Positions 1,992-64,000 of a stretch of DNA of 64,000 bases are shown here, piece by piece. The translations under genes and the position numbers were made by a program. Under the pieces are notes generated by a model that was not told the origin of the DNA, did not search any database, and saw nothing but the letters and a program-made list of their open reading frames with translations. The stretch spans positions 698,960 to 762,959 of the forward strand of contig NW_019217852.1 in NCBI RefSeq assembly GCF_002571385.2, given 5' to 3'. Source of the stretch: Stylophora pistillata. Taxonomy: Eukaryota. Position 1 is the stretch's first letter. The number at the start of each line of letters is the position of its first letter.

Positions 1992-4900
1992 TAAAACTTT
2001 TAGGCCTGATAAAAATATGGGAAGAACCGATGTCAAACGTATTAAGTTCACTCGAACCTATCAAAACTTGTAGTATTTACACACGATTTTTAAAATGTTA
2101 ACATTATTGTCTGGTTCTCTCTGTACGAATAACTTTACTAACTCGTCTTGGTGACACCTGATACATACGTTAAATAAACTAACAGAGCACGTATAACAAC
2201 AGGGTGGCTTACCTGAAGGGGAAATATCTCACGAGTTAATCCAAGCACGTGCTGTTCCAGTGGCTTTTAATACCACGCGGAAAATTTACATTCAGATACC
2301 TCAGAACGCATGATAATTCTGACAGATGTCACAAGCTGTCACTTTCATGTTATAAACAAGAAGCTTCCAGTTGAAGTTGGAAACATAAGTGTGAAAAGAA
2401 GTTGTTTTCGAAAATTGTGCTCTTTTCTAGGAATTAACATTTAGGGTCATTGACATGCGAAAATTGATGTAGCCAAATGCCTGTTTTAGGATCCCATAAA
2501 ATATTTTAACATCAAGATGGTGATTATCAGTTGCTATATGTGTAAATCTTTATTGTCTGCTTTCGGCTCTTTGTACTTTTTGCTTATTTTTTCTTAACTT
2601 AAATTGAATAGAAACTGGAATTAAAACATGAATACGGAGAATTTTTTTAAATCAAGTTGAACAGGAGCCGAACAACTTCCTAAGATGATAAAGTCGGTAC
2701 TGCTCAGCTCTCGAAATGCAAAGCTGAATTTGATGTTCAAAGTGACGGAAGATAACTTCGAACCATTGTATTTTGAGATAGCCTTTAAGCATTGGTGGTT
2801 ATTGCGCCACAAGGAACAAATCTAGGACCAAAAATTGGGTCATTGTTGCAAGCGTGCTCTAAACTGCTCTAAACTAGGAGTCATTTTATTCCATTTTTGA
2901 TAGGGATGGAAATTGTATGTTGAGTTTTCAATGTGAGAATCCCGTTTTGCACTATACCAGGCGCCGTCTTCAAGGGACTTAAGTTAAAAAAAAAAAAAAA
3001 ANNNNNNNNNNNNNNNNNNNNNNNNNNNNNNNNNNNNNNNNNNNNNNNNNNNNNNNNNNNNNNNNNNNNNNNNNNNNNNNNNNNNNNNNNNNNNNNNNNN
3101 NNNNNNNNNNNNNNNNNNNNNNNNNNNNNNNNNNNNNNNNNNNNNNNNNNNNNNNNNNNNNNNNNNNNNNNNNNNNNNNNNNNNNNNNNNNNNNNNNNNN
3201 NNNNNNNNNNNNNNNNNNNNNNNNNNNNNNNNNNNNNNNNNNNNNNNNNNNNNNNNNNNNNNNNNNNNNNNNNNNNNNNNNNNNNNNNNNNNNNNNNNNN
3301 NNNNNNNNNNNNNNNNNNNNNNNNNNNNNNNNNNNNNNNNNNAAAAAACAAAAAAAAAAAAACAAACGAACAAAACGAAAAGGAAAGAGGCAGATGTTAG
3401 CATGCTTGTATGACTTGATCTGATAAAAAGAACAGAGATATCAGCATAATACCGCATGTCAAAAAATTACTGAAAGTAGTTTGATATAAATATTAATTCT
3501 TCAGCATGGCATCTTGACATCTACGCAAAATACGCCACTGTTGACATGTATCCCAATAATTTTGAGTCATGTTTATAGGAAGTATTGAGAAATTGCACAG
3601 TTGATGATCTAGAAAGACAAAACGGATTTTAAATTATGCCATTTTCTGAATTTTAAAATAAAGATGGCAAACAGGGGGTATCTAATCTATGATTTTGGCG
3701 GGCGCCTATCGCGGGTTGCGTGTAAATTGTTGCGTATATATTTTCGCAGGAAAATTGTGGCAGGTAAATCTTCGAACAATTGCCATACTTTTCATCTTAT
3801 TTCTATTGTATCCATCATTATATTTTTCATTTTTTGATAATTTTTTATCATCATTACTATTGTAGTTGTCAGTATTATTATAGTTATCATTATTACAATT
3901 ATTATCATGGTAATTTTTGGCATATAGGGTCCCAATTAAAACAACGGATGCAGGAGCCCATTATGGACTCCTGACGTATGTTTTACGGGAATCTTGTTTA
4001 AATATCGTTGTTATTATTATTTTCAGTGGTAAAACCAGGTGGAGCCAGGTATGGGGGGAATAATGCTCAAATCGCAAATTCGGTTCAAACTTGACATAAA
4101 TAAGAGGTATGATGAGTAAACAACTGTAGGAAGGTAACAGGTCATAATTGGCTGCTCTTGGAAAAAAGTGGGCCTTTAAATACCCCTTTTTCAATATTTG
4201 GAAAACTAAGAAAACTTGTCTTTACTCAAGCAAGAAATTAGGGAAGAAATGAAATTGATTATGCGAACAGAGTGGAGAAATGGATGTTCTGCCAACCTAT
4301 ATCTCTCATTCATTGAAGTGTCATTTTCACACTTTCTTTAAACTCATAATAACCTGCATTTGGGCCAAGTTTGAGCTAACCAGAGATTTGAGCATTGTCA
4401 GCAGTACCCGGTTTTCTCGTGGACACTCTCTTAATATTTCAAGTTCTAAATATTTGTAAAACTTTAATGATAATCTGATCATCTGAGTCAAACGATGTGA
4501 ACAGTTGGCATGACTGTATTGTCATCTACGATGCAATTTTGAACAATAAATGTTTTGGATAGGGAAAAAAATGGTCTCTAAAATTGCAATAGAACTTAAA
4601 AAATAAATCAAAAGGAAAGTACATATTCCACAATAGTGCCTACCAAAAGTCCTCATGGATGCAACTCATGTAATCGGAGAAATGATGGTGTGAAATTTTT
4701 GCAAATTAACATATGTTATATTTTTAAGTTTTAAAATGGGTTTATTCATAATAAACCACCTAAGTTACAAAATAAAAGTGCTAAAGCATGTGGGCTTGGC
4801 CCCAACTAATTATTAATAAACAGTCCAAAGTTCCAAAGCTCAAGAGTTCTTAAATATATACGAGTATCAAATATTACTAATATTAATGTAAGGTTATAAA

Positions 4901-40400: not shown

Positions 40401-43400
40401 TGGTGAATTATTGGTGAGGCGTAGCAGCGTCTTACTAACTTACCCCAGCTCCAGAAGAGAGGAATTGATACTCTGTGCTTCTTGGAGTCGTTCTCCTTCA
40501 GCCTTGGTCTTCTTCACCCTCTCACTTCCTGCTAGATCGCAGCTGCGAATGGAAATATTGTGAAACAAAATCGTTGGACATAAGAAAACGGGGATAACCT
40601 CACATAATGCTTACAATAAACAGGTCTCCGCCACGATATCTTGAGCAATTTCAGAATTTAGAAAACTTTTCAAAACTATATAAAAACTTGAAATAATGAT
40701 TCACTGAGAAAGATTAGCATCACACAAATAAGCATATACCTGAAATAACATAGGATTGTTGAGGATGGGAAAGATAGACTCGGATTGTTGTTGGCGCAAA
40801 ACTTAAAAAAATCGACGCTTAAGTTGTCAGGATGCACAAATCATGACAATCGTAATCCCTTTCAATATATCCTTTGACTTTTTACGCAATTGTAAACTTT
40901 TCTATCACGAGGATTTTCGTTGTGAAACTGTGTCGGGCCTGATCGGTAAAATGTCTTCTTACGTTAAAACACTTGCATGAACTTTATATGCTTGTACGCT
41001 TTCATGTTGCCGGAATTCTACTGAACCGGAATTGCAGAAATCAGAACAAAATATCAAGGCGAAGATATTGACGTTACTAAATGTGGGTGCGCCCAGAATA
41101 ATTCAAACGCAGTTGAAAAAATATCAGATCCTTAATCTATCGCTCAAGCTTCCATACGCCAAAGATAAATTAGCATTGGCGTCAAATAGAAAGAAGGTAA
41201 AGGATGAAATTCGAAGCCATACAAACTGTCGTGTTTACTGACCTCTCGTATCCTTGTCTGCAATTGTTTGCCTAGGTTTAATCTTTCAGGGGATAGAACT
41301 TGAAACCGAAAGTGAGTAGCAGAAAGGACATAAAAGAACTTTGATTTGAATAGCTATTCGCAAAGCGCAAGTTGCTCATACCTATTTTTTTTTAGTATCA
41401 AGATCATTTATGAATTATACTCAATTTGAATTCCATGTTTGAGGAAAAGCAGTATTGTGGCCAACAAACACCGTTTTTCCGCCAATCAGCAAATAGGGCA
41501 AGTCCTTTTTCTGCCTTATTCCTCAATCTAGTAGACATTTTTTTATGACAAAAAGAAATGGTTTCTTTAAATGATTTTCTGCTGCATGTATAATACATCA
41601 TCGGAGAACAAAGATACCCAGTCTTCGAAAACTTGAACCACTAAATCATTTATCTGCTCCGAGTAATAATACTGAAGAAAAACGAAAAATTTTATAAACG
41701 ACATATTGCCTCGTATGTGGTTTCCTACGACGGCAACCTAAACCAAAACCGGTCGTTAACAAGGCCGCAGCAGAAGGTGAAATATTGTGATAACTTGTGA
41801 TAGTGCGCCACAACGATCAAACCATTTCCGTAAAGCGTGATTCGTGCTTTGCACTCGTCCGTAAAATTGCTGCAATGCACTGAGTTAGGCGTAGCGTGAG
41901 ATGAGCGCAAAAATTCAAACACCGGCAAAACCTGGTGCCAACTACACTCACCACGATTACTTTAAACGGACCAAAGAGCAAACGTCAAGCGAACAGGAAC
42001 AATCAGCGCAAACGAAGCAGAAATGAATGAAAAAAATGAGAAAGAGGAAGAAGAAGGGAAAGAAAGGAAAAGAACAGTAACGGGATACTTACACGTAAAG
42101 TTTTCCTCTGACCGCGGCTAAACCATAAGTTTGAGATGAAATTTTCGAAAGCATTTCTTCATCCTCCTATGTGAAAAAACAAAACAAAACAAAACAAAAA
42201 AGGAACAAAAAAGAAATAAACAGCACTTAATCAATATGCAATCACTTTATACTGACCGATAATTAAACTAAGATTACATGCATGTGTTATGTTGTCGACT
42301 TTAGGAGAATCTGTACCTAAAAGTTTGCTTATGATTACCATGGCCATTAAAAGTCAGTTTCGAAGTCCATTACAGTGAATGGTGGTCGCGTTCATTGATC
42401 TTGTACGATTTATGTAAGTCTAAAATTCTTTAGAATGTAAAAGAGAGTAGATCATTTTTACAACAGAGAAAAAAAAGGGAACATTTACCATTGGTAAACC
42501 ACGTTTATTCAGAACTGGACAGAAAAAATTTATTAAAAAAAGACTTACATCGAAGTGATCAGAAGAACCTAAGCCTTCCACAGAGCCGCTTTCACTTGAA
42601 TACTCTGTGTCTGAGGTTCCTGATATATAATAAGACTCGTAACTACTAAAGGAGTCTGTTATTCCTGCAATAAAGAGAAAACAAGAGTGATTTCAAGGCT
42701 GCAAACTTGCGAGATATCAACTGGAGAAAATACTAATGGCGATGCATTTTTTTCCTTTGGAATTTCAAGGCAATGATGAAGGAATCAATTAAACCAAAAA
42801 GGGAAGGGACAAAAGATTGAAAATCAAACCGATGACTGAACTAATAAGCTACAAAGGTCAAGTACAACGTTATTTCCTAAAACAATTATCACCTCCATAG
42901 CGACGTGGAACACTTAGCCTTTCGATTTTAAGTAGACAAACGGCATGAGATCTGCAAGAAAAAAAAAACGAAAGGGGATTAAAATACGTAAGAAAGCTCA
43001 TCGCGTTTATGATGCTATGTGGTAGCAAGCGGGTGCAATTGACGTACACTTAATTGTTTTTTTTTAGTCAGATAGTCAATTGATCGGTGGGTCGATCAAT
43101 CAGTCAGTGAGCCATCTTAAAATGGAATTAATTTTTTTTAGCCTTTCACAAACCTGCTGGAGTGTCGATTCATTTTAGTCTCGGCAATGGCAAGTTTCTT
43201 TTTGCCAGACTTCAACAATTTACAAATCTCCTCTGGACTCTTGACAAAGTATTCAGATAAGTTATCCACGTAAACTCCTACGACAAATAGAAGAATCAGA
43301 ATGAACACATAACCAATCCAAGGTTCTAGCCTATTATGCACATTGCCACTTTAGATGAGAGCTTCTTGACGTCAAATCTAGTCGGGGAAGCTCTCTCTGC

Positions 43401-46400
43401 CTAGTGTTCCTTGTTATTATGACACTCCCCCCTCCCAGACATTGTGAAATGCTTTCAGCTTACAGTTTACTTTATGATAGTTTCTTTACCTTTTTTAGGA
43501 TGTTCTCTCAAGTAAACTTCCGTCCCGGATTTTTCAGAGCCTAGCAAATCGTAAACTCGTGCCTGGTATATCTGCAAGTAGGAACATGTCACCTAGAAAA
43601 CAAAACAAAAACAAAAAAGGTTGCAGAAGGCAATGGCTATAACATTTGCAAATGGTGGGAGTGTAGCACACTCGTGTAGATTGGAAACAGTTTCAGTATA
43701 TCTCTTTGTTAGCTCTTGCGCTCCACTCTCGTTATTTTCATTGATCGGTTTGCATGTTTTTAAGTGGCAGAATACTGATATTAGACTAAGTTTCTTCCAT
43801 TTGGAGGATACTTTTTCAAGAAAAGTGCACTTCAGTCAAGCAGGGTCAAGCGCAAAAACTGTGAATGTTCTACAAAAAGGGAGGCATGTTGAATTTTCCT
43901 GTTCATTGAGGAGTGCATCCTTTACTGTGATGTATTGAATTGGATTTGCGGTTTTTATAATAATTAAACACTTAAATGGATGATTGATCAATCACTGAAT
44001 CAGTAATTGAGTGAATCAATCAATCAATCGATCGATCAGTCAGTTAGTCAACAAATTAGATGAATGAAGGGCTGTTCATCTCCTCCAAATTATTGAAGAT
44101 AACTGGTAGGTCTTGGGAAGTAATTCATATGAACTTATTTTTAGAGGAACCGTAAAAAACTACCTTCAATAACAACAAGCACAAAAATCATTCTATTATG
44201 TGACTTTTTAGGCTTACCGCGTATGAATGTGCAACGTCTTTATCGATCAGAGCGAACATATGCGATACGACACTGGTTGTTAATCCGTCTGTAGCCATTA
44301 GGGTGTGTGTTTTACCTGTAAGTGTAAAATTGTACATAGCAAAAGGTTATCGATCTCTCTTGATGAAAGACGAATCAAAGATAAACTGTTTCTTTGCGTT
44401 TTCATATAGTTTCCTTGAGACTGTTCCAACATTGCTACTTATATCACGCTGTTCTTTATGGAAGCTCCCAAAAAAATTTTGCATATCCGTGGTCACACAG
44501 AAACGGCGGGGCCTGGGGGTTGGAAGTTACTTCTGTGTTGGCTCACAGTCTCTCCCACTTTCTACAAGCAATAAAGTTCATCAGTTCTCAAATTGAGTGT
44601 TACCGTAATTTTCACCATCCTTTAAAACTGCAGCTCAGATAATTTGCTTCGCGGTTTGCACAGTCACGCTTTCCAACCTCATGCAACTAGAAGACTCAAG
44701 ACGCTTCGCAATTTAAAGCTCTGGGAAGGTAGAATTTTCTTTAAGTACCTGCTCCAGTTTGTCCGTATGCCATCAAAATCCCATTTAGGCCGGTCATGGA
44801 GGCTTCCACCAAGGGCTTACCAACAACCTGATACACCTTGAAGGACATCGGAACACGTATTGAGCACCCAGCTAAATTTTTAGTCACAAACATAACCTAA
44901 ACTTGTGGTTGCACTTAGTTATGCTTGATGGTGTGTTGTGCATCAAAGAAAACATAACAATGTTGCAAGATTCAAGTAGTTGTTTGACAGACATAGAAAA
45001 CGATAAAGGGCGTGATATTGTGAGTGAAAGGACTACAGAATGTTATTTCAAGCCACTTCGAACATATACCTCATCGTTTTCGGCATCTGGTGGTAATACT
45101 TGGTCAAATTGAAAGATTTTCTCTCTCTTACCATCCATCACATGAACCTATTTGATAAAATAAACTAGATTTGATAAAAATCGCAAAGAAAGAGTACGCT
45201 GGCAAAAATTTGAGGTCTCGTAAGGATACACTATTTCTTCTGGATTATTCAGGGATTGGTGTGAATTCGGTGAAATGAGGTGGTTCTAAGCTAAGTCAAT
45301 ATTCTATGTAAAAAGCTGCCACTATCATAGCTAACTCAGTCACTGATTTGGGTTAGAGAACGTTTGTGGCGAATGGGAATCAGTCGCTGTAAATTTGAAA
45401 TGGGTGAGAATTAAAGGACAGTATTACAGCAGCCGAGCTCTGTGTGCTATTCGGTACTCACCCGTAGCCTTTTATTGTATTTGCAGTTTCGTTTGATTAT
45501 TATTTTTTTTATTATATACACCTGAGTCAGGTTATCATTTTCCGCGCTAACTGCTCCTTTTCCATCCAAGCTTCTGACGTCACTCTCAACCAGAGGACGA
45601 ATCCTGACATAAACTTGAACCCTGCCTGTTCCTTCTTCTTCAAATACGTCTGAACCTTAATAAAAATATTCAAACATTTATTTCTACGACACACTTTCTA
45701 CTCAGTGTTTACACATTTTCTTTAAACACCACTGCCAGTGAGAGTCTTGGGTTTAAGCCTTTTAGCCCGAGGAGTGACAAGTATGTAATTTTTCCTTTAA
45801 TGAGTATCGCACTTGAATGATACATTGAAGTCATAAGAATTAGGAAATGATCGCGAACTAAACAAGCTATTGATTATTAAGCAAATTCTCCTTGTCAGTA
45901 CCATGAAAAATGTATAGAGAACAGTATGGAGAATATGCATAGTGATGTGAGGGTGTCAAGGGTTAGTGACGTCATTGCTGAAGAGGTTAAGTTGCTCTGC
46001 ATTGGGATTTCCGTTTTGGGTAAGCATAAAAATAGAGTACTTAAACTGGAATTTTAATTCAAAAGATAATTGGAGCTTAAAACTGGCGTTATCTTTGCTA
46101 TCAGGTTCGATAATCATTTCAAGTTTTAACTTAAGTCTTACAAGTAAAAGACTTTGAAAGACAAGGCCACCCACATCCTGAATGACCCTTGCGGTCTAAC
46201 TTTATGAGCATAAGACATTCACAAGGATCCCACAACTCATTGATCACAAAACACGGTAACATTAGATCTCTTTCTCTCTGAGAAAAAAAAAAAACGTCTG
46301 CTAAGTCTGGATGGTTAGTAACTTTGCCTAGAGCTCTTGATGGTAAATTGTACACCAATCATACTAGAGCCCTTCAGACTCATATTCGATATTTAAGGTT

Positions 46401-52203: not shown

Positions 52204-55200
52204 ATGGCCACTACCCCACACCGCTTGAATGCAACACTTCCAGCTAACACTGGTACATTCCTTGCCGAAGATGGAAGGAAATGGTCATCGTTAGACATGC
52301 ATCAACAGGGACCTGAACCTTTCCAATCCATACCTGCACAAGAACTGCTCAAAGACAACTGTAGCAAATGTGGTTGGATAAGGAAAGAGGGTGGAAGTGT
52401 AAAATCATGTGAGTCCCTTTATCTTGCGTCATGTGTAATTTTTTAATTTTAGTGACTTCATATGGAATCTTTTATTACAGATCTCTCCATATGAAGCCCT
52501 TCTATCTAAATGGCCTGCCATCTAGAGCATCAGCCTTTGATGAGCTCCAGTTTCTAATGAGCAATCTTCACTCTCCTCTTTCCTTAATCAAAATTGCCAT
52601 GATAAAAATGCATGGTTAAATAAGGGTGGTGGGATAATGCTTTACCTATGGTTATACTGTAGTATTGTTTTATATTTTTTTGTACTCTTGCACAATTGTA
52701 CCTTTCTGTTGGATACTACCACACTTATTGGTGTGCAAAAAGAACAATTAAAAGATATGATGATGTGTACTATATGAGATATCGGAACTTTCAGTATCTT
52801 TAGAGCGACAATTTAGAAAATAATCTCTGTGTACATAAGTAAATGTTTTTATTTGTGTACTTCTATCAGATACTATTGCACTTGTTGGTGTGCCTCTCTT
52901 TTGGTACTGCTGCATAAAGCAATGTTTGTAAGGCTCATGAAGTGGAGAGTTCATGAAGTGGAGTTTGAAAGATGGCTAGCCCTTATGTAGCTTGAGAGTA
53001 ATTCAATATTTTTGTGTATTTACAGGGCGAGACAGATATGTCATCTTGCACAAAGGCTCCCTGTATTATTACAATACTTCGGATGCTAAAACCACAAATG
53101 GCAAGTTTTCCCTCAGTGGATACAGGTATGTTTTAATGAAAACAAAATTTTCAGTCAGGTGATGGATGCTAATGTAGAGTTCCTACTCCACCTGGAAAAA
53201 GATTGAACAGAGAAAAACTCTCTATTATAGTTGTTTAGACTTTTGAAAAACCTGTGACCATGACAAGAAAATACATCCAGCTACTAAATAATTTTGAATA
53301 ATGAAAAGTTAAATATAATTGTTACTTTGGAAAGCCCCTGAAAATGTACATGTTTGTAGACTAATATTTTTATCCATATCTTATTTTAGGTTGTCCCCTG
53401 CACCGGAGAAAACTTCCAAATTTCCATGGACTTTTAAACTAGTTCATTTACAACCAGAAAAAAGGACTTACTACTTTGCTGCTTATTCTGAACAAGAAAT
53501 GACTGTAAGTACATTTCTTTGTTTGAGAAACAGTGCATGCATTCATTTTTAATTCATGTTGAATGCAGGGTGTCAATCGAGTCCTATATTCCTATAAAAT
53601 CCTATAAAATCTTATTTTTTCAGACTTGTCCTATAAAGTCCTATAGATTGAGGAAAAATCCTATGTTTTCTTATGTTTTAAGCCTTCTTTTCCAAAAAAA
53701 TATTTAAAAAGAAATATTTAGAAAAAAGAAGTAAACATTGTATTGGCATTCAAAATCCACAATCCAAGAGATTTTTGTCACAAAGATCTGTCAGCAACAC
53801 CTCAGAAAGCAAATTGCTTAATTTGGCAACATATTAAATCCGTACATCTAGAGTGTCTAAAAAGTAAAGAACTTTAGGTTGGTTCTATAAGTTACTGTCA
53901 AATTGGTCCTATATTTTTGCCGTTTTGGCGGGTTTTGTTCTATATTTTCAGGTCGTCGAGTCCCATATTCCTATATTTTTGGACCCCTAAAGCCCTTGAC
54001 ACCCTGTGAATGTAGTGAGTAGATTCTCTGATGAGTTCTAGCAATAGTTTTTCTTTTGTTACCTTCGTATCCCTTGACACCATAACATCCGTATGCATAT
54101 TCTCCATACTGTTCTGAATATCAAGCAGGCAAGTGATGAGAATAAAGAAAAATATGAACAAGGGGATCATCAGTTGATCCAATACCAAATTCTCCAAACC
54201 AACATTACAGAATTGTGTGGCAGACAGTGAGGAGAAATACTAATGAGATCTTAGGAGTGACAGGGGTAACTCTTGTCAGTTACTCCTGGGAATGAAATGG
54301 TTCACAAGCTATTCAGTTAAACCTTTTTCTTTATACGTAGTGCTTTTTCTTGCTAGCACTGTGAGGGAGTATTTTATCCTTTGGTTTCATATAACCTCCT
54401 TGGAGAGCCTTTTAGGCGTGACTTCTGTCCACAATAGATTGTGTTTGATTTGGAAAATGAAATTAAGAGTTTGGAGCTGTGGGAAATCTAGGGAGTGGCT
54501 GCGAGTCCTCCCCCATTTCCAAAACTTGAGTCCCAAGCCGAGGAATGAAGTTTGCCAAAAAGATGTATTTAAGTCAGAAAGGTTCTTCTTGCTCTCCTTA
54601 ACCATTACCTTCCAGCCCTCATTCCTTGAAGTTTGCATTCTGAAGAAACAGTACTGTTTTAACTTGTTCAATAGGCAATAGTGAGGAAGGAGTTGTTTTA
54701 AATGAGTGAAAAATACAAGTAAGCTAGTTGTTGTGGACTAATACAGCAATTGAAGTCTAAACATGAATGTCAGCATGTCAGAAGAATGTCTGAATCATTC
54801 AACAACATGGCCAGCTCCTCTCTGAGCCTGTTAGCAGTCCTCTGGCCTGAATGGACTACTGTACGGTAGTATAGCGGTAAACTCTTCACATTCACCAATG
54901 GCCACTGCATCAGCCACCTTCACAATGGTTTCTTATAATTATAAGTGTTGCCAAGTTTGCTCTCAGAAAAAGTTTTCAATTTGCTGCTCAATTCTTTTTG
55001 TAGGAATGGATGGACAGTATAATAAGTGATATGAGAGAATACTGTGGGACAGGAAGACAAAACATGTGAGTGTCCTTAAGAGACCCAAATTGTAACAATT
55101 TTTGTAACTAATTGAGCAGGTTTATTGTAAAAATAATTATTGTTTAAAGGTGATAACGATGTCCTGAGTGTCATTTTATTAAAATGATGCTGGACCTAAT

Positions 55201-58200
55201 TCTCTGAAAAAGTATCATCAAAATTGAGAATTGAGACACGATTCTAACATCAGAAGGCTAATAGTCTCACAATACTGTTCTCTGCAGATTTTCTTTAGTA
55301 CTCAAAGGAAGAATTTTCCTGATAATCAAGAGCCTCTTCATTCAAAAGCTTTTCCATTATCCTTGTGATGTAAATGTTTGATTTAGGGGGGTGATAATGT
55401 TAGGTAAAATTAGACGCTAGTCACTCCTAGGGATTTAAGGTTAATAAATTGGTGCAAAGTAAGCTCTTATAATGCATTTCTTTTTTTGTTGTTCACGCAG
55501 TGTTGAGCCAAATGATAATTCAGACCTGGAGTATTGCTATCCAGAAGTACAACCTAAATTTGACATGCAACAATTAGCAGCAATGTTTGGAAAACCTCAA
55601 CCACTATGTACATCAGATGCATTGTACTGTCCACCCCCTGAAATGGACTCTTCACAAGTGCAAAGAAAGCCCCTTCCTCTTCAAAGACCTGCATTTCCTT
55701 CACCTAAGCCAGTTAGAGGGGGGTTCAGCTACACTGGTAGCCCAGCTCCCATGCCAGGCCAGGGAGCTGCTTCAATAGGGGCAGTCAGGCAATCTCCTCA
55801 GGTGGCAAGTCCTGGTTTCCCCCGCAAAATAAATGAGCCTCCTGCTGTACCTTCAAGGATGGGAAAACCACTAGCACCTCCTAAACCACTACCTCGACCA
55901 CCACCTCTGATGCGGCATACCACCGAACCCATAACGAGGTTTCCATCTTCGCCCTGTGGAGGTACTGCACATTGTCTGAAGTAACTAAAGTATGGCATTA
56001 TGTGTCTGTTATTGTCTCAGCTAGTTCATCCAATCTATTAAGTCCATTGCAATCATCCTTATCACACCTATCTATGGGGAGGTAAAATTGAATCGTTCTG
56101 TTCTTGCAATGTTTTTATTGACTTTTGAACAGCTTCTCACTGCTGACTTAGCTTTTATCTTGTCCTGGCTGAGGATCTCTCAACAACAAATGGATAATCC
56201 TGTGCTTTATAATCTTGTTTTATTGATTTATATTTATAATTAAAATCTTATTGGGTTCTTAGGGTTTGAATTTGAAGATTATTGTAATCAAATTTTGTTG
56301 ATAACTGTGTTAATATTGAATTATGTTTAGACCAAGAAGAAGAAGAAGGTGAAGGTTACTTGGACATAGTTCCAGACACAAATCCTGAAGATGTCAATGA
56401 CAAGCAGTCCACCTTGTCAAGGTCTGTCCAGTAAGAAGCACCTTCCTTTGCCATCATTCTCTATCAATGGAGTGTAATTTCTGTGCAGGATAACAGAAAC
56501 TTTTCTATATTTATGAAGCTTCTAATTGAGGGGAGCTACATTTTCCTCTACATTGCTCTTTTTGATTGTTATTAAGAGCTTTGTGTATTTTATTTTTGGG
56601 ATCTCTTACAAAAGGAGACACATTGAATCATTAAGTAACAATCACTGGCATTCATCAGCTAATGTACATAAGCCTCTTAAACATCTACTTAAGAGTTACC
56701 TTGTTTTTAATAGAGCTAGGTGTACCCTTACTGCTCCAGGCTTGATGTGACAGCTAGTAAACAGGCATGTAGAAAAAGCAAAGAAAAGAGGGGAGGGATT
56801 TTGGAGAGGGGAAGAAGAGATTCCCGTAGCCCTAATTTTTTTTTTTTTGCGGTCTGCTTTTTTCACTAGTAGAAAGGATACTTGTACTCTTGATGCTCTT
56901 GAACCCTCCTGATATGGAAATTTCAACACCTCATTGTTGCTATTAAGTATTATATAAATTATACCGTGACTGGTCTAGTCTTGCTGCATAAAAATACAGA
57001 AGCCTTTTTGAGTGTCTAATATTTGTTGTACAAAATCATTAAGATACCGGTAAACGGATACCTGTACATCTTAAAAATAGACTAAATTGTATAAGGGGTT
57101 CAAATAAAATAATAGCTAAGTTTTTCCTTTTTTTGGTTTGGACCAGTATGACGATTCAGTTTTGACTCAGATCTTCAAATACTTCTTGCAGAGTAATTTC
57201 AGCCATGTTAAGGTAAAGAAGTCACGCTATAGTAATTACGATCAATCCTAAGATAACAGAAATCTTGAAAAATGCCCCCTTTGTTCTTAGCCTACAGTAA
57301 TCGGTTACTCAGTTTACGGAACGGGACGAGTTGTTGATTCCTTTTTTGTAAATTGTTACTTAAAGTTGCAACTCAGAAAATGGTGTTACCAGTAAAGAAG
57401 TGGTTTTACCAGTATGTGGTACTAGTAGCTAAAGGGTAACGTTGACTATGCCGCTTTTTAATCTTAGTGTTGTTTTCTCTGTTGGCTTTAGGGGATATCC
57501 TGATGGACGAAGCATCCGACGGCATCACAATGAGGTGAGTATGGAACCATTTATTTTCTATGATTTTCAGACCTAGTTGAGCGTCAGTAATCTTACAAAG
57601 CTTGTGTTTCATTGTTTGTAATGTCGTCTCTAGAATGCTGAATAGAGTCCTAAAATCCATAAACTCCGGATCCTATAGCTTAATGAGTGTTGGTGATTCC
57701 CCTGAATGCTATTCAATCGTAGCTTACCCACCCCACCCCCCTGCACAGTGCGTAAGCAGCTCGTGACTCGTGGGTACACATGTACCAACGGGGGTACTAT
57801 GAGGAAGTGTTTTTTTCCAAGATCTTAACGTTGCCAGGCTTAATACTTATTTAACCTGGGGCTTTAATTTTGATTTGTAGTCCATCAGGCTCTGCTTTCC
57901 TCAATCCAAAGGACTTTGGAATAATCATTCCGTCGTTCCCCCTGCACCACTCCCCACCCCACCTCCCTAATGTGAAGTTATTTTGCTGACACTTGGTATA
58001 TGGCGATGGATAGAGATTATAATCTCTTGTGACTGATCATTCACTGCCAAGTGTATAAATTCCAGTTTCTATCAGCGTAATTTTGTGACACACTGTAGTT
58101 TCACGTGTTCACAGGCTTTCGAAATACAGGACAATCGTTTTGTTAATTTACCACCTTCATTTTATTGTTCCAGGGAGTTCTTCCTTCCTCGGCTGTGAAA

Positions 58201-59437
58201 CTCGACGTGGACAAGATCCAAGTTGGGGCGTAAGTACTTCACTGAAACCTTTTATGGAGGTTATTTGTAAAATGCTTGTGAAAATACTTGTAATGAAATC
58301 GAAAAAGTACCCATCTTTTCATTTATGTTATTGACATTTACTTATGTAAGCGGGGTTTCTGATATGACCCACTATGAGTTGGAAGCTATTTGATCTCTAA
58401 GTACAATTTGAATTTGCTAATTTTTTTCTTTTATTCTCTTCTATTGCCTGTTTTCTACTGAAACCGATCAATATAAAGTCGTTTTATTGGTTATGTAGCC
58501 AAATATGCCTCAGGCAAAAGAACAACTGAATCCTGATAAAGCGAACTCCTTATTCGCGGAGCACATATCAACAGAAATAGGTCTTTGATCGAGAGTGGAG
58601 AGTACGGTTTTCGTGGTCTAATATAGTAGTCGTGATTGCAGGGCTTGTTACTGTTTTCGTGTTTTAATGTTTATTTCTAACTGTTTTTTCCCGCAGTCTC
58701 TTGGAAAATAAACTCGGAGTCTACATATTGCGTAAAAGTCAGAACGCACAGTCAGAGCGGGTAAACGCAACGTTTAAAATGATTTTTAATCATACAAAAC
58801 TCGTGTACTTCAGAGTCTGAACACCGTAGATTGTTTACATCGACCGTTAATGATTTGTATATGGTAACATGACTTATAAGAGTACGGGGAATAATTACAA
58901 ACGTGCAAGCAGTGGGAGCTCAGTCAAAGAGTGAATTTAATCTATCAGTACAGTCCAAGAAAACCATACATCAATAAAACAGGTCTGTCTCTCAAATCTT
59001 GTTCAAACAAGAAACTGTAATCGCCTTTTCAGCATCTTGCTTTTCACACTTCACAAAGTAGTATTTCCAAGTTCGAGGAAAAATTATTTTTTTATTTACT
59101 TCTTTATGTTTGTTTTGTTTTCATGCAGGCTCTGTCCGTGTGGACTGGAGATCGAGTACGACACTACATGGTGTTTCAGGATGAGGTATGTTGTTAATTC
59201 TACGTCTGCTAAGCTTTTTTTACTTTGTTTCTTGTAAATTCTTATTCATATGGCAGTCTGGACGCACAATCCACAATGAACCCTTACCCGCATATCTGCG
59301 TTGTGATATTTTTGCAGAAGGGCTATGCTCTTGATCCTGAGGGCGTGCGATGTAAAACAATTGAGGACCTTTTAAAACACTTCTACGACTTCACCTTACC
59401 AAGATGTGACGTGAAACTTAAAGCGCCCTATAAATAG
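52204..59437 (+). CDS. SH3BP2: SH3 domain-binding protein 2 (3BP2)-like adaptor with PH, proline-rich and SH2 regions
   Basis: Exons 52204-52408, 53026-53125, 53390-53504, 55004-55065, 55501-55961, 56331-56421(or 56430), 57492-57534, 58174-58229, 58697-58760, 59129-59185 and 59318-59437(TAG), all phase-consistent. PH sequence IPAQELL...GWIRKEGG...WRDRYVILHKGSLYYY...GKFSLSGYR...FKLVH...RTYYFAA..EQEM.EW matches the 3BP2 PH pattern. SH2: GVYILRKS...VRHY...TIEDLLKHFY...LP...LKAPY. Probable 5'UTR exon donor at 50640. Confidence 0.88.
53566..54006. mobile_element. Non-autonomous DNA transposon (MITE) with 11-bp TIRs and a 6-bp TSD, hAT-like
   Basis: TIRs CAGGGTGTCAA / TTGACACCCTG, TSD TGAATG at 53560-53565 and 54007-54012, and many subterminal TCCTAT repeats. 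Confidence 0.9.
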
Positions 59438-61620
59438 ACATGATTTGATTGGACTATAGGCCAACATCAAATAGAGGACCATGGAGTAACCAGTCAGAGT
59501 CGACCATATCCTTCATCTGTTAAATTCATTATCGTATTAGCTGAAGGTGCTAATTAATCGTGTGGGGTGTTATCAAGCGGTTGGTGTTTTGCGAAGGCCA
59601 GACTTTAATTTTATATCAAAATTATTGCAAATTCAACATGAAACGATACGATTCTAGGCGAGGCTCTGACAATAACCTCGAATATTCCTCAGAGCTTTGT
59701 AGTGATGACAATTCCTTTACCTTGTATTTTGAAGTGAAACAATTGGACAATTTTGCGACTTCCTAAATTTTCTCCAGTAAGTTTGTTTATTTTTTAGACA
59801 GAATACTTCCTCAAAATACATAGATATAAAGATAGCTACTTAATATGTTCCCAGAGAAGGGTATAAAATTAACAAAAGTAAATCCCCTGTGGTATTTAAA
59901 AAGCCTCATCTTCTTCTAGTTTAGGTACTGGACTTATCTAAGTTCTTATAATAGATGATCGTTAGTTGTTGTGCACTGACGGCTTTTGCTACTCCTAGCA
60001 GGTATATGGTGTTAACTTTATGTTTTGAAATTAGGAAAATGTAGTAGAAGGATTATAATGTTAATAGAATCTCATAAAGTGGGAGAAATATCTGCTCATA
60101 ATTGTCTTCAAATAGTCTTCATGAATGCGAAACAAGGACTTCAATGTAGATTAAAATATTCTATACCAATTTGTGGGCTGGTTCCGCTTTTGCTGCATAG
60201 CAAACGCCAATATAATGGCAACTTCAAACCAATATGCAGTGCATTGTGTTGGAAATAAGACACCATAACAGAGATTTACGTTAACATTTTGCTAATTATG
60301 TGGAAAGAATGAACGTAAATTTTTATTGAATTCTTTTTAAACTAGCAACTGTACAGTACAATTGACAATTAATCCGAATTTTGCTTTGATGCATACAGAT
60401 GGTTGATGCCAACTGTTGATATACCTTGAAAAAAAATTTCCTTGAAAGTTAAGTGGGTCAAATTTTTTACTGGAGTTAATAGAATCAAGCATCGCGTATT
60501 TGGTTATCATTTACTTTTGTCTTCGCAATGTAATCGATGATCATTCTCCTGAATTGTATTGAACATTAAATCGTACCTAACTTATGATTTATTTTACGTA
60601 GTCAGAGAAATACGAGTAAAATAATTTTATATTTTGATAATTAGCTACATTTGAACCTTTTTGAAATTTTGAAATAAAGCTATATTTTCCATTCGATATC
60701 TTATGCGCCTGTAACTACTGAACGAGTTTGGTGATCTATGCTTTTTTATTTATTATTACGTCATAAAAATTGCATTCTCGTTGATCTAATTTCAATTTAT
60801 TGATGGAGGTGGTACAAAGATACGTATCCATGCCAACAAATACGGCTATAGGACTACAACGATCCTCTGCCAAACGAAAATATGCGACGTTTTTCTTCTG
60901 GCTATCCCCGTGGAAAAAGTTGACTAATCAGCAAAGTAGAGAGAGGCTTCCGTTGTTTTATTGGCGTACTTTCTGCCAAAATGTATGTTACTGGACCTGG
61001 TACAGATTTTAAGTCTTTCGGTCGCCGTTATGGAAATCTCTGAACGAGAGAGGGGTGGGGGAGGGGGAATCTCAAAAACTCTTTGTCTCAAATATATTGT
61101 TTAAAATCGTAGAGTTTGCGTCATTGTTGATGCTAGGTAATGTTGCACCTTCTCAAAAACTCAGTGTGAACCTTGATTAAATGAAATTTATAATGACCTT
61201 TCCAATTACATATGTTCTCTTTCACCATTATTTTGAAATCCGTCCGCGCCATTTGGTCACGAGCGCAAAACGTACTCATCCAAAAATTCTCACACATGAT
61301 GCCTGGGCCATTCTGTCATGTTAGTCCACGGGAAAATCATAGTGACAACGTAGCGTCAATATACATTACATCACCATCTCCTTAATTTGAAAGGACGCAA
61401 CGCCACCTTCAATAGTCACACACAAAACGTATTGCTACTAGGGCAGAGGAAAAGTATTAGAATTGAATAAACCATAACTGACCTTCCCTTAATTGTCCGT
61501 TCCGAAATTCAAAATAGTCCTGGAAACTAGTTTGGCTTGCGTGGAATGCTGGGGTTGTTTTGGGGGACGTGGAAAAGCATGGCAGATGTCGAACTGTAGG
61601 TTGTAAATGACAAATTCAGC

Positions 61621-61930
61621 ATGGGAAAACGTAACTGCTGTGTCCCAACCTGTGTGAATTCTTGGCGAAATTCCCCTGGAGTGAAGTATCATTCTCTTCC
61701 CAAAGAGAAAGCTGTCTTAAAAGAATATAAAAGGCTTTTAAGAAACGATAACCTCAAAGAGATTTCGGCTAACACAAGTATTTGTGGAAATCACATCTCG
61801 CCGGGGAGGAGAACGGATGTCCCATGCGCAACTGCCTTCGATCTTTCTATGGACAAACCCAGAAAAATTCGACGTGAAATAGTCAAACACGATTTGCCTT
61901 CAAAGCGTAAAAAGATATCAGTGGATTTTG
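61621..61930 (+). pseudogene. Frameshifted THAP-domain fragment, probably a DNA transposon relic
   Basis: MGKRNCCVPTC...YHSLPKE...ICGNH is the C2CH THAP signature. The expected continuation PGGERMSHAQLPSIF(L)W lies in another frame after ~61795. Confidence 0.75.
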
Positions 61931-62881
61931 AAGCTGTAACAGACATAAGCAGGGTCCCGACTAGAACTTGTGATTTATTCAAGCGCAACGAAATGATGGC
62001 CAAAGCTGAATCACTAATTCGAAAACTCATGGCTTGATACTTGAATTAGGGAGTTTTGGCTCGGCCCGTGTCATTTTTATCTGATTTATCGGTTCAGAAA
62101 TCATGATTCGGAAAACACAAACAGCTTGCGAAACATTGGTTTACGGAAAATCATGATCGCAATCGTCTCGTGGAGTTTACTAACCAAGCTCCTTGTTATA
62201 TGAGCACACCCTGTGGTTTCTTTGCATATAACTGACTTTGGTTAACCAATCTGCTACTTGAGTCAACCTTTCGACAATAGGGTTTTTGGTTGGTTTTTCT
62301 TTCTGGCATAATAAAAACCTCCTTTTTCTAGCGTAGTATCGTCGTTCGAGTCCAGCTGAAATTGGAAAGAATTTTTGGCGATTTCTGCTTAAAATCCAAC
62401 TTCTTCAACCATCCAGAACACACTGTCACTCAAAACAGGCAGCGAAGAAAGAAATATCCTGTGCAGTCTAGAGATTAGTACTATATCACCAGGCTAAAGA
62501 GAGATTTTTATTCATTTGGGTTTCATACTAATAAATCAAAGAACAGATGGTAAGAGATTGAGCTGGATTTTCATGCTGTAGCAGTCAAAATATTCAACAG
62601 AATATTTATAATGAAAATTCTATTGACTGACGTGTATGGCTGCTAATGGGCAGCTATAGAAGTGTGATGGCCCAACTCTACAATGGCATGATTCTCAGTA
62701 TGCATATTCTAGCAAGTGTCAAAAGGAAAATTAAGATTTGTAGTGATAATTCACTCAGGAGATGTTTGTTAAACAACCGCTTTTCCCTCTGGATCTTATT
62801 AGGTGAATATCTTCTAAAATCAGGCCACTGATATGGAAGTAGTTCTTTGAGATATTTTATTATAACCGGCTTTTATTCTAG

Positions 62882-64000
62882 TTCAAGGAGGCAAAAGCAT
62901 CAAACTCTGGTCATATTCCAAATGAAGAGGACAGCAACAGTTACAGCAGACGCTGCTCATTATCAAGAAGGCTTAGAGTTACTTTCCTGGCATCAGAATG
63001 GGGATCAAGCAAAGGAGGCCTCTCCGCCTTAAACAGGGAATTTGCAATAAACATTGCGAAGGACCCAACAGCTGAGGTCAGTTACTTCGTTCAAGCTGCA
63101 ATGACGAGAACAAGAAAGCAGCTCATAGTCACAAAGTAGAACTTGTAAAGGCAGTAAGGCGGCCCGGCTTCGATGAACTGCAATGCCTCAGCTTTCCACC
63201 GAAAGATTTGCCAATCGACATAGTTGTTGGAAATGGTGTTAAACTTGGCCATCAGGCACAAATTATTAAGGATTCCCACAAATGTCAATGGTTCAGGTTG
63301 TTCATACAGACCCTGAAGAACTAGAGACTTATAAAGAATGTGCCAGTCCAATTTCGAATGCTCATAAAAAGCATGAAACAGACTGAGGTAGAACTTTGCG
63401 AGCTGACTGACTTCGTTGTACCAGTTGGCCCTAAGTTGTACAAAACGTTAAATTCTTATCTCGCCTCATGCAAGAAGGAACAATGTCTCCTTGAATTTAC
63501 CCCTGGAATTTTAACAGAATTCTCTGAACTGAATCAAGGTCTAGACAAACGAGAAGTTTGTAAAGTCTTGGGTTTTGGTCGTGGAGATTCGGAGGGCTTT
63601 AGATTAAAAGGATTCGACATTGCAGCTAGAGCTGTGGCTAAACTGAGTTATTGTCATCTGTTATTTGTTGGGGCGGCGAAGGAAAACCTAGAAAGTACAC
63701 AAAAACTTTTCCTCGATTGTGATATCCCTTCCAGCCGGCTAAGGGTACGACCGTTTTTAAATAGCAGGGATGATTTGAAAAAGCTATTTTGCGAGGCAGA
63801 TCTCGTAGTTATGCCCTCGCGAACCGAAGGCTTTGGGTTAACGGGTCTTGAAGCCTTATCAGCTGGTCTTCCTATTCGTGTAAGTCGAAAATCAGAATTT
63901 GGAGAAGCTTTGATGAAAATACCATTTGGCCGGCATTTTGTGATTGACTCAGATGATCAAGATCAGTGGGCCAAAGCAATTGAGGAAGTCTGCAGCAGCG
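62882..64000 (+). pseudogene. GT4 (Glycos_transf_1, MshA-like) glycosyltransferase domain with frameshifts; continues beyond the window
   Basis: RVTFLASEWGSSKGGLSALNREFA...IDIVVGNGVKLGHQAQII...QVVHTDPEEL...VGPKL...FGRGDSEGFRLKGFDIAARA...ADLVVMPSRTEGFGLTGLEALSAGLP, with the EX7E motif at 63826-63852. Frame changes are needed at ~63091, ~63291 and ~63381. Acceptor AG at 62880-62881. Confidence 0.88.

What the first reader, a model, noticed from the sequence alone, without database searches (positions are those of the whole stretch)
56400..57534. Cherubism/tankyrase degron in a coral SH3BP2, apparently switchable by two splice donors 9 nt apart
Seen: splicing from AAG|GTCTGT (56421) to the acceptor at 57492 gives ...TLS-RGYPDGRS. 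A second in-phase donor, CCA|GTAAGA (56430), gives ...SRSVQGYPDGRS, which moves the Arg three residues away. Established: human 3BP2 RSPPDGQS is the RxxPDG tankyrase-binding motif that triggers PARylation and RNF146-dependent degradation, and its mutation causes cherubism. Inference: tankyrase control of 3BP2 predates bilaterians, and alternative donor use may produce degradable and stabilised isoforms of an immune-signalling adaptor.
Basis: partly seen in the sequence, partly recalled or inferred. Interest (0 to 1): 0.8.

Follow-up and report, generated by a model that had tools for sequence, protein, structure and literature searches.

The report
Splice-toggled tankyrase motif in coral SH3BP2
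The stony-coral version of the signalling adaptor SH3BP2 carries the tankyrase-docking motif that is mutated in human cherubism, and a second splice site 9 bases downstream, conserved in every stony coral examined, makes a minor isoform in which three extra residues break the motif's spacing; both isoforms are already in RefSeq, but the effect of the toggle is untested.

Summary
The window holds the Stylophora pistillata SH3BP2-like gene: 11 coding exons at 52204-59437 on the + strand, with PH, Pro-rich and SH2 parts.

- **Short isoform.** Donor 56421 joined to acceptor 57492 gives ...TLSRGYPDGRS. This equals RefSeq isoform X2 (XP_022784709.1, 457 aa).
- **Long isoform.** Donor 56430 gives ...TLSRSVQGYPDGRS. 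This equals isoform X1 (XP_022784708.1, 460 aa). The two proteins differ only by SVQ.
- **Motif.** RGxPDG is invariant in 12 coral orthologues and paralogues. Sea anemones have R[LMN]RP[DE]G at the same place. A 2022 paper had already aligned the Nematostella motif with human RSPPDGQS.
- **Tandem donor.** The 18-nt block AAG|GTCTGTCCA|GTAAGA is identical in four unnamed stony-coral loci; a Porites locus matches through GTAAG. Acropora and Montipora have a 12-nt, still in-frame, version.
- **Single donors elsewhere.** An anemone orthologue and the coral's own paralogue have one donor only.
- **Usage.** Transcript assemblies show the short form as the major one. The long form was seen directly only in Montipora (2 of 55 contigs).

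Not shown: tankyrase binding, degradation, regulated donor choice, or read-level use of donor 56430 in Stylophora.

Verdict: a real feature, a new variant of a known kind, of moderate interest.

The parts
52204..52408 (+). Coding exon 1 (ATG at 52204), start of the PH domain
   Evidence: Translation is an exact substring of P0071 and P0072. Donor T|GTGAGT read.
53026..53125 (+). Coding exon 2, PH domain
   Evidence: The exon alone hits Pfam PH.
53390..53504 (+). Coding exon 3, PH domain
55004..55065 (+). Coding exon 4, end of the PH domain (EWMDSIISDMREYCGTGRQN)
   Evidence: Sequence printed. It matches P0071 residues 141-160.
55501..55961 (+). Coding exon 5, the Pro-rich linker (PPKPLPRPPP)
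   Evidence: It is 100% identical to P0071 residues 162-314.
56331..56421 (+). Coding exon 6, short form. An acidic Tyr segment (EEEEGEGYLDIVPD) ending ...TLS + AG of the Arg codon. Donor 1 is AAG|GTCTGT.
   Evidence: The homologous upstream donor supplies the junction in spliced transcript contigs of Acropora. It is implied by about 40 Stylophora-cluster contigs that encode ...TLSRGYPDG.
56422..56430 (+). The 9-nt alternative exon extension GTCTGTCCA. With the split codons it adds Ser-Val-Gln between Arg and Gly-Tyr-Pro-Asp-Gly.
   Evidence: P0072 = P0071 + SVQ. The bases are identical in loci L001-L005 and in Porites L021.
56431..56436 (+). Donor 2 intron side, GTAAGA (CCA|GTAAGA)
   Evidence: It is conserved as GTAAG in all stony corals with the 9-nt form. 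Acropora has GTAAGA and Montipora GTGAGG at +12.
57492..57534 (+). Coding exon 7 (43 nt): G of the Arg/Gln codon, then GYPDGRSIRRHHNE, the core of the tankyrase-binding motif
   Evidence: Orthologous exons read GFPDGRSF, GCPDGQST, GYPDGKSF and GHPDGKD in other corals.
58174..58229 (+). Coding exon 8, the lead-in to the SH2 domain (GVLPSSAVKLDVDKIQVG)
58697..58760 (+). Coding exon 9, SH2
59129..59185 (+). Coding exon 10, SH2
59318..59437 (+). Coding exon 11, end of SH2 and the stop codon (TAG at 59435-59437)

Best explanation
This is the Stylophora pistillata orthologue of the adaptor SH3BP2 (PH domain, Pro-rich linker, SH2 domain).

**Default mRNA.** It uses the upstream donor at 56421. The Arg codon is split AG|G across the exon 6/7 junction, so the join creates RGYPDGRS. 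This is a canonical tankyrase-binding motif, lying about 15 residues before the SH2 region, at the place of human RSPPDGQS. Inferred, not shown: tankyrase ankyrin-repeat clusters dock on this motif, poly-ADP-ribosylate the adaptor, and RNF146 then marks it for degradation, as in mammals.

**Minor mRNA.** A second, in-frame donor lies 9 nt downstream at 56430. It is conserved across stony corals and inserts Ser-Val-Gln between the essential Arg and the GYPDG core. That removes the canonical R-x-x-P-D-G spacing. Inferred, not shown: this weakens or abolishes tankyrase docking and yields a longer-lived adaptor.

Donor choice would then set what fraction of SH3BP2 escapes tankyrase control.
For: **Gene identity and isoforms**
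- Exon-by-exon identity to XP_022784709.1 and XP_022784708.1.
- Pfam PH and SH2 hits.

**Motif quality**
- R1, P4, D5, G6, no Pro at position 7, and Ser at position 8 as in 3BP2. All fit the published rules (PMC6082341; PMC9688111 Table 2).

**Motif constraint**
- RGxPDG is invariant in 12 coral orthologues and paralogues inside a divergent linker.
- Anemones have RMRPEG, RNRPDG and RLRPEG at the same place.
- The S. pistillata paralogue 41 kb downstream makes RGAPDGQS across the same intron position.

**Major isoform**
- Every Logan transcript-derived protein of Stylophora, Pocillopora, Acropora and Porites that I saw has the short form.
- An Acropora transcript mapped to its genome shows the AAG|GTCTGC junction.

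**Second donor is real and selected**
- AAG|GTCTGTCCA|GTAAGA is identical in L001-L005; the Porites locus matches through GTAAG (GTAAGG).
- Intron identity runs to +15/+16 here. At the other, well-anchored donors of the gene in the same loci it fades within about 3-7 bases.
- Acropora and Montipora have 12 nt instead of 9, still in frame and without a stop.
- Montipora contig L029 (Logan SRR28116743) is spliced over at least 11 exons and uses donor 2.
- RefSeq X1/X2 pairs differ only by SVQ or SVTE in Stylophora, Pocillopora (2 species), Orbicella, Oculina and Montipora (2 species). Porites lutea (RefSeq X1) and P. harrisoni (GenBank models) also have the long SVQ form.

**Effect on the motif**
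- The long form contains no R-x-x-[PGAC]-x-G match at that place.

**Origin**
- The anemone orthologue and the coral paralogue each have one strong donor, and reading on from it hits a stop. The tandem donor is therefore a feature specific to the stony-coral orthologue.
Against: - No binding, PARylation or half-life data exist for any cnidarian SH3BP2.
- I could not pin down the tankyrase gene in this genome. PARP and SAM hits never lie next to each other. Its presence rests on published findings for Nematostella and Hydra (PMC9688111).
- The long form is rare. It is 0 of about 40 Stylophora-cluster contigs and 2 of 55 Montipora contigs. Assembled contigs also drop minor variants.
- For Stylophora itself, the only evidence for donor 56430 is a RefSeq model.
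- AXIN1/2 show that an Arg placed further N-terminal, with inserted residues looped out, still binds. The SVQ form may keep some affinity.
- The 9 inserted bases are identical in all species with the 9-nt form, so coding constraint and splice-signal constraint cannot be told apart.
Confidence: 0.5

Rival explanations
1. The motif is functional, but the long isoform is low-level splicing noise. Donor 2 (GTAAGA) would be conserved because it helps U1 snRNP recruit to the weak upstream donor (GTCTGT). It would not be conserved because the SVQ protein matters.
For: - Donor 1 has a poor intron side (C at +3, T at +4) yet is the major site. Donor 2 has a strong intron side but a poor exon side.
- The long form is absent from about 40 Stylophora-cluster and all Pocillopora, Acropora and Porites Logan-derived proteins, and is 2 of 55 contigs in Montipora.
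- The insert bases are identical wherever the 9-nt form exists, as expected for an RNA signal.
Against: - When the spacing changed in Acroporidae it changed by 3 nt (9 to 12). The extension stayed in frame and free of stops in both Acropora and Montipora, although its sequence changed (GCCTCTGA versus GTTACTGA).
- Independent annotation runs list the long form in Stylophora, Pocillopora (2 species), Orbicella, Oculina, Montipora (2 species) and Porites (2 species).
- With only two spacing states, the frame argument is weak (chance about 1 in 3).
Confidence: 0.3
2. Both isoforms bind tankyrase. In the long form Arg345 acts as a distal Arg and SVQ loops out, as in the second AXIN1/2 motif. The tandem donor would then tune affinity or be neutral, not switch the degron off.
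For: PMC6082341 states that the Arg can sit further N-terminal, with a seven-residue loop in AXIN1/2. It also notes that RNF146 has atypical Arg positions, and that a distal Arg should be considered when predicting binders.
Against: - The spacing here is R-x7-G. The spacings reported so far are R-x4-G, R-x5-G and AXIN's R-x11-G.
- A three-residue loop is much tighter than AXIN's seven-residue loop.
- Neither point has been tested.
Confidence: 0.12
3. The conserved R-G-x-P-D-G-x-S-[FI]-[RK] stretch serves a partner other than tankyrase in cnidarians. It could, for example, be a phospho-Ser or SH2-proximal regulatory site. Its likeness to the tankyrase motif would then be inherited sequence without that function.
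For: - Conservation extends beyond the 8-residue motif. 'PDGxSF[RK]' is shared by corals, anemones and the human motif as listed in PMC9688111.
- No cnidarian experiment exists.
Against: - The invariant residues are the ones the tankyrase rules call essential or most preferred (R1, G6, P4, D5).
- Tankyrases, and their ability to bind the canonical motif, are conserved down to sponges (PMC9688111).
Confidence: 0.08

Closest known systems
Human and mouse SH3BP2 (3BP2) tankyrase-binding motif 415-RSPPDGQS, the cherubism hot spot (Levaot 2011 and Guettler 2011, as cited in PMC9688111 and PMC12940019)
   Same: - The same PH, Pro-rich and SH2 architecture.
- The motif lies in the linker just before the SH2 domain.
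- R1, P4, D5, G6 and S8 are identical. Orbicella RGFPDGQSFR matches the human RSPPDGQS octamer (Table 2 of PMC9688111) at 6 of 8 positions.
   Different: - In stony corals the Arg codon is split by an intron, and a tandem donor can insert 3-4 residues after the Arg. I found no report of splicing that touches the motif in vertebrates in the searched library.
- Binding and degradation are proven in mammals and untested in corals.
Nematostella vectensis SH3BP2 isoform X3 (XP_032222077.1), RLRPEGKS, in the supplementary alignment of Sowa et al. 2022 (PMC9688111)
   Same: A cnidarian orthologue with a canonical motif aligned to the human one. It already implies that the motif is pre-bilaterian.
   Different: - That paper did not discuss splicing.
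- The anemone locus I could read (Actinia tenebrosa, L019) has a single donor AAG|GTAATA, and reading on from it hits a stop.
Second tankyrase-binding motif of AXIN1/2 (Arg followed by a seven-residue looped insertion; Morrone 2012 as described in PMC6082341)
   Same: An Arg separated from the x-x-[small]-[D/E]-G core by inserted residues, as in the coral long isoform.
   Different: - The AXIN insertion is 7 residues, is constitutive, and is shown to bind.
- The coral insertion is 3-4 residues, is made by alternative splicing, and is untested.
Tandem (closely spaced, in-frame) alternative 5' splice sites, and splicing that adds or removes short linear motifs (general knowledge; PMC4666095 lists the tankyrase docking motif among such motifs)
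   Same: Two competing suboptimal donors a few codons apart give in-frame isoforms that differ inside a disordered, motif-bearing linker.
   Different: Here the insertion does not delete the motif. It falls between its two essential residues. The donor pair is also conserved across the deep split of stony corals into robust and complex clades (at least 245 My, PMC5730576 abstract).

Membership tests
SH3BP2 (3BP2) adaptor family | N-terminal PH domain | tested here: met
   Pfam PH, E = 1.4e-20, residues 55-148 of P0071. Exons 2 and 3 alone also hit PH.
SH3BP2 (3BP2) adaptor family | C-terminal SH2 domain | tested here: met
   Pfam SH2, E = 2.5e-8, residues 378-440 of P0071.
SH3BP2 (3BP2) adaptor family | Pro-rich SH3-binding linker between PH and SH2 | tested here: met
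   Exon 5 encodes PPKPLPRPPP and other PxxP stretches. SH3 binding itself was not tested.
SH3BP2 (3BP2) adaptor family | Orthology to vertebrate SH3BP2 | tested here: inconclusive
   [quoted passage not shown] Sowa et al. aligned the Nematostella relative with the vertebrate proteins. I built no tree. Stony corals also carry a paralogue cluster.
Canonical tankyrase-binding motif (R-x-x-[small hydrophobic/G]-[D/E]-G-[no P]-[D/E preferred]) | Arg at position 1 and Gly at position 6 | tested here: met
   Short isoform RGYPDGRS. Both residues are invariant in 12 sequences.
Canonical tankyrase-binding motif (R-x-x-[small hydrophobic/G]-[D/E]-G-[no P]-[D/E preferred]) | Small or hydrophobic residue at position 4, Asp or Glu at position 5, no Pro at position 7 | tested here: met
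   P4, D5 and R7, judged against the rules quoted from PMC6082341. Position 8 is Ser as in human 3BP2, not the favoured Asp/Glu.
Canonical tankyrase-binding motif (R-x-x-[small hydrophobic/G]-[D/E]-G-[no P]-[D/E preferred]) | Same spacing kept in the long isoform | tested here: not met
   RSVQGYPDG has R-x7-G. A regular-expression scan finds no R-x-x-[PGAC]-x-G at that place in the long forms P0029, P0057, P0062 and P0066.
Canonical tankyrase-binding motif (R-x-x-[small hydrophobic/G]-[D/E]-G-[no P]-[D/E preferred]) | Physical binding to tankyrase ARC domains, PARylation, and RNF146-dependent turnover | not testable with these tools
This needs bench assays.
Canonical tankyrase-binding motif (R-x-x-[small hydrophobic/G]-[D/E]-G-[no P]-[D/E preferred]) | A tankyrase encoded in the same genome | tested here: inconclusive
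   There are 58 PARP-domain matches and about 45 SAM matches in G000, but none are adjacent. Tankyrase and RNF146 are reported in Nematostella and Hydra (PMC9688111).
Functional tandem alternative 5' splice site | Two GT donors a multiple of 3 nt apart, with no stop between them | tested here: met
   9 nt in Stylophora, L001-L005 and Porites. 12 nt in Acropora and Montipora.
Functional tandem alternative 5' splice site | Both junctions present in RNA | tested here: inconclusive
   Met in Montipora: short and long transcript contigs, with L029 mapped to the genome. For Stylophora only the short junction is seen in transcript-derived proteins, and the long one is a RefSeq model. A read-level test was not possible.
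Functional tandem alternative 5' splice site | Regulated (condition- or tissue-dependent) donor choice | not tested
   No reads could be laid on the window.

The most novel reading that the evidence does not exclude
Stony corals evolved a splice-level control of the cherubism degron before the robust/complex split. By choosing the downstream donor, a cell would make an SH3BP2 with 3-4 residues wedged between Arg1 and the P-D-G core. That protein would escape tankyrase/RNF146 destruction. It would be a natural, reversible equivalent of the human gain-of-function mutations, and corals might use it to raise adaptor levels during immune, symbiosis or stress signalling.
Probability: 0.3. Interest if true: 0.7.

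Novelty: new variant of a known kind. Interest (0 to 1): 0.45.

Why it matters
If the toggle works as proposed, it would be the first case in which alternative splicing changes the spacing between the two essential residues of a tankyrase-binding motif.

It would show that control of SH3BP2 stability by tankyrase is old enough to have gained its own regulatory layer in a non-bilaterian lineage.

It would also give coral biologists a small, easily measured marker, a 9-nt junction ratio, for a candidate immune or signalling adaptor. For tankyrase biochemists it offers a natural test of how far the Arg can be moved from the core.

If the long form is noise, the finding reduces to one more orthologue with a conserved motif. 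That much was already implied by a 2022 survey.

Tried and rejected
- **The look-up of sequencing runs on window:55400-59500.**
- **Word search with exon 5 alone.** It found only prokaryote-style ORF calls on coral genomic contigs. This was still useful, because those contigs gave the orthologous loci.
- **Profile search of the representative library with an exon-5 alignment.** It gave 17 hits. Only one, P0017 (Acropora), was a full-length spliced protein, and it opened the rest.
- **Spliced model.** It was never joined and sent to a search tool. Exons were checked one at a time by reference against database proteins.
- **Tankyrase in G000.** PARP, SAM_2 and SAM_1 matches share only one contig, and there they lie about 180 kb apart. 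The gene was not located. This is not evidence of absence, because genes match exon by exon and only the best candidates are scored.
- **Exaiptasia locus (P0158).** Not on record.
- **The search of earlier findings.** It returned only this same finding and nothing for 'tankyrase'.
- **Hypothesis considered and rejected.** When I first saw the invariant block, I considered that donor 2 alone is used, with R-S-V-Q simply coding. Transcript-derived proteins and the Acropora transcript-to-genome mapping show that donor 1 is the major site.
- **Literature.** The one search aimed at splicing that alters a tankyrase-binding motif found three papers, none on SH3BP2. Two searches for SH3BP2 in corals found nothing relevant. 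The library covers open-access papers only.
Full report
**1. What is at the coordinates**

- AAG|GTCTGT, with the last exon base at 56421.
- CCA|GTAAGA, with the last exon base at 56430.
- The acceptor GGCTTTAG|GGGATAT, with the first exon base at 57492, opening a 43-nt exon that ends GAG|GTGAGT at 57534.

Joining 56421 to 57492 reads TLS-R-GYPDGRS, with the Arg codon split AG|G. Joining 56430 to 57492 reads TLSRSVQ-GYPDGRS.

**2. The gene**

Open stretches on the + strand and the sequence itself give 11 coding exons:
- 52204-52408
- 53026-53125
- 53390-53504
- 55004-55065
- 55501-55961
- 56331-56421 (or to 56430)
- 57492-57534
- 58174-58229
- 58697-58760
- 59129-59185
- 59318-59437

I did not send a joined model to any search tool. 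Each exon was translated on its own, and each is an exact substring of two database proteins found through relatives:
- P0072 = XP_022784708.1, isoform X1, 460 aa.

These two differ only by Ser-Val-Gln inserted after Arg345. Both lie on a contig of 919,006 bp, which is the length of the window's own contig G000:C69. P0071 has a PH domain at 55-148 and an SH2 domain at 378-440. The motif occupies residues 345-352, in the linker just before the SH2 region, as in the human protein.

**3. The motif**

RGYPDGRS fits the published rules for tankyrase-binding motifs (PMC6082341):
- Arg at position 1 and Gly at position 6 are essential.
- Position 4 takes a small or hydrophobic residue.
- Asp is preferred at position 5.
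- Pro is excluded at position 7.

The human 3BP2 motif is listed as 415-RSPPDGQS in PMC9688111.

In an alignment of 12 stony-coral orthologues and paralogues, sharing as little as 43% identity, R345, G346, P348, D349 and G350 are invariant. The surrounding linker is not.

Sea anemones have the motif at the same place:
- Actinia tenebrosa: RMRPEGNSF.
- Exaiptasia: RNRPDGHSF.
- Nematostella: RLRPEGKSF.

The supplementary SH3BP2 file of Sowa et al. 2022 (PMC9688111) already aligns the Nematostella motif with the human, lamprey and amphioxus motifs. That the motif is present before bilaterians is therefore not a new inference. No cnidarian experiment was found.

**4. The two donors in other corals**

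The exon-5 search found ORF calls on genomic contigs of other corals. I fetched their loci.

| Source | Donor region |
|---|---|
| Stylophora (window), L001-L003 (unnamed assemblies), L004/L005 (two Tara metagenome scaffolds) | AAG\|GTCTGTCCA\|GTAAGA |
| Porites scaffold L021 | AAG\|GTCTGTCCA\|GTAAGG |
| Acropora | AAG\|GTCTGCCTCTGA\|GTAAGA |
| Montipora | AAG\|GTCTGTTACTGA\|GTGAGG |

In Acropora and Montipora the spacing is 12 nt, still in frame and without a stop.

At four other well-anchored donors of the same gene (exons 7-10), intron identity between Stylophora and L001-L003 fades within about 3-7 bases. At this donor it runs to +15/+16. The second donor is therefore under selection.

The robust and complex coral clades that share it diverged at least 245 My ago (PMC5730576 abstract).

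Two relatives lack the tandem donor:
- The Actinia orthologue has the same intron position but a single donor, AAG|GTAATA, and reading on from it hits a stop.
- The S. pistillata paralogue 41 kb downstream makes RGAPDGQS across the same Arg-splitting intron from a single donor, GAG|GTAAGC. Reading on from it also hits a stop.

The tandem donor is thus specific to the stony-coral SH3BP2 orthologue.

**5. Which donor is used**

Full-length proteins from transcript assemblies (Logan) and from NCBI were found with the Acropora protein and with an alignment. Their clusters were listed.

- **Short form.** Every Logan-derived protein of the Stylophora cluster (about 40 contigs), and of Pocillopora, Acropora and Porites, has the short form. 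An Acropora transcript mapped to its genome uses AAG|GTCTGC.
- **Long form in databases.** RefSeq X1/X2 pairs exist in S. pistillata, Pocillopora damicornis, P. verrucosa, Orbicella faveolata, Oculina patagonica, Montipora foliosa and M. capricornis. Porites lutea has a RefSeq X1 of the long form. P. harrisoni has both forms as GenBank models. An A. cervicornis GenBank model also uses the long form.
- **Long form in transcripts.** It was assembled from RNA only in Montipora, in 2 contigs against 53 for the short form. One of them, L029 from run SRR28116743, is spliced over at least 11 exons and carries the donor-2 junction.

Both donors are therefore used in at least one stony coral, and the RxxPDG form is the major product. 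For Stylophora itself, use of 56430 rests on a RefSeq model. I take such models to need RNA support, but I could not check that.

**6. Mechanism: what is shown and what is inferred**

Shown:
- The gene and its two isoforms.
- The invariance of the motif.
- The selection on both donors.
- The predominance of the short form.

Inferred from mammalian work:
- Tankyrase docks on RGYPDGRS, PARylates the adaptor, and RNF146 targets it for degradation.
- The SVQ insertion moves the essential Arg three residues away, giving R-x7-G, so it weakens or abolishes docking.

The main caveat comes from AXIN1/2, where an Arg followed by a seven-residue looped insertion still binds. The long form could keep some affinity.

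A second caveat is that donor 2 might be conserved as a U1-recruiting element for the weak donor 1, with the long isoform as noise. The 9-to-12-nt change that keeps the frame argues against this, but only weakly.

I could not locate the tankyrase gene in this genome. Published work reports tankyrase and RNF146 in Nematostella and Hydra.

**7. Comparison with what is known, and novelty**

The gene is a member of the SH3BP2 family by architecture and naming. The short isoform meets every sequence criterion of a canonical tankyrase-binding motif, and the long isoform fails the spacing criterion.

Three things are already known:
- The motif's role in mammals.
- Its presence in a cnidarian orthologue (Sowa 2022).
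- The two isoforms as database records.

Two things appear undescribed in the library I could search. One is that the isoforms differ exactly between the two essential residues of the motif. The other is that the donor pair is conserved across stony corals. I rate this a new variant of a known kind.

**8. Verdict**

The evolutionary claim is supported but was anticipated. The switch is plausible, selected and directly testable, but it is unproven and the long form is rare. Interest 0.45. Confidence in the full mechanism 0.5.

Noticed in passing
G000:C69:799240-815768 (about 36-53 kb beyond the window's end on the same contig); locus L028:241-7600: One or two paralogous PH-SH2 adaptor genes sit in tandem with SH3BP2. 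The first makes RGAPDGQS across the same Arg-codon-splitting intron but from a single strong donor (GAG|GTAAGC), so its tankyrase-type motif is constitutive. Orthologues of this paralogue exist in Orbicella, Oculina, Pocillopora and Desmophyllum, reading RG[ADN]PDG[QE]SFK.
   Followed up: partly
window 63325-63999 (+), runs off the window end: An intronless ORF matches Pfam PF20706, 'Family 4 glycosyltransferase in conflict systems' (E = 2.9e-41). A 461-470-aa gene with the same Pfam hits lies downstream of SH3BP2 in other corals (L001 19471-20621, L004 9675-11060, L005 9699-11084). This may be an old bacterial-type acquisition fixed in stony corals.
   Followed up: partly
window 61600-62034 (+): An ORF with a THAP zinc-finger domain (Pfam PF05485, E = 3.2e-7). 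It is either a domesticated or a transposon-derived gene.
   Followed up: no
window 40443-40610 (-), probably extending to about 45656 (-): An exon of a kinesin motor gene on the opposite strand (Pfam Kinesin, E = 5.4e-10, DLAGSER...). The ORF at 45450-45656 reads [11 protein letters not shown], a kinesin N-terminal motif recognised by eye, but gave no Pfam hit.
   Followed up: partly
window 56336-56347 (GAA run, poly-Glu in exon 6): Transcript-derived proteins of the Stylophora and Pocillopora clusters come with one Glu more or less (457 versus 458 aa, 459 versus 460 aa). This is a length polymorphism of the GAA repeat and is unrelated to the donor choice.
   Followed up: yes
P0029 (KAK2572580.1, Acropora cervicornis, 519 aa): This GenBank model uses the downstream donor (YLRSASEGHPDG) and also carries a 36-residue stretch before exon 5 that the 483-aa transcripts lack. 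It looks like retained intron sequence, so the model is probably wrong there.
   Followed up: partly
window 3002-3342 and 6152: Runs of N (341 bases, and 1 base).
   Followed up: no
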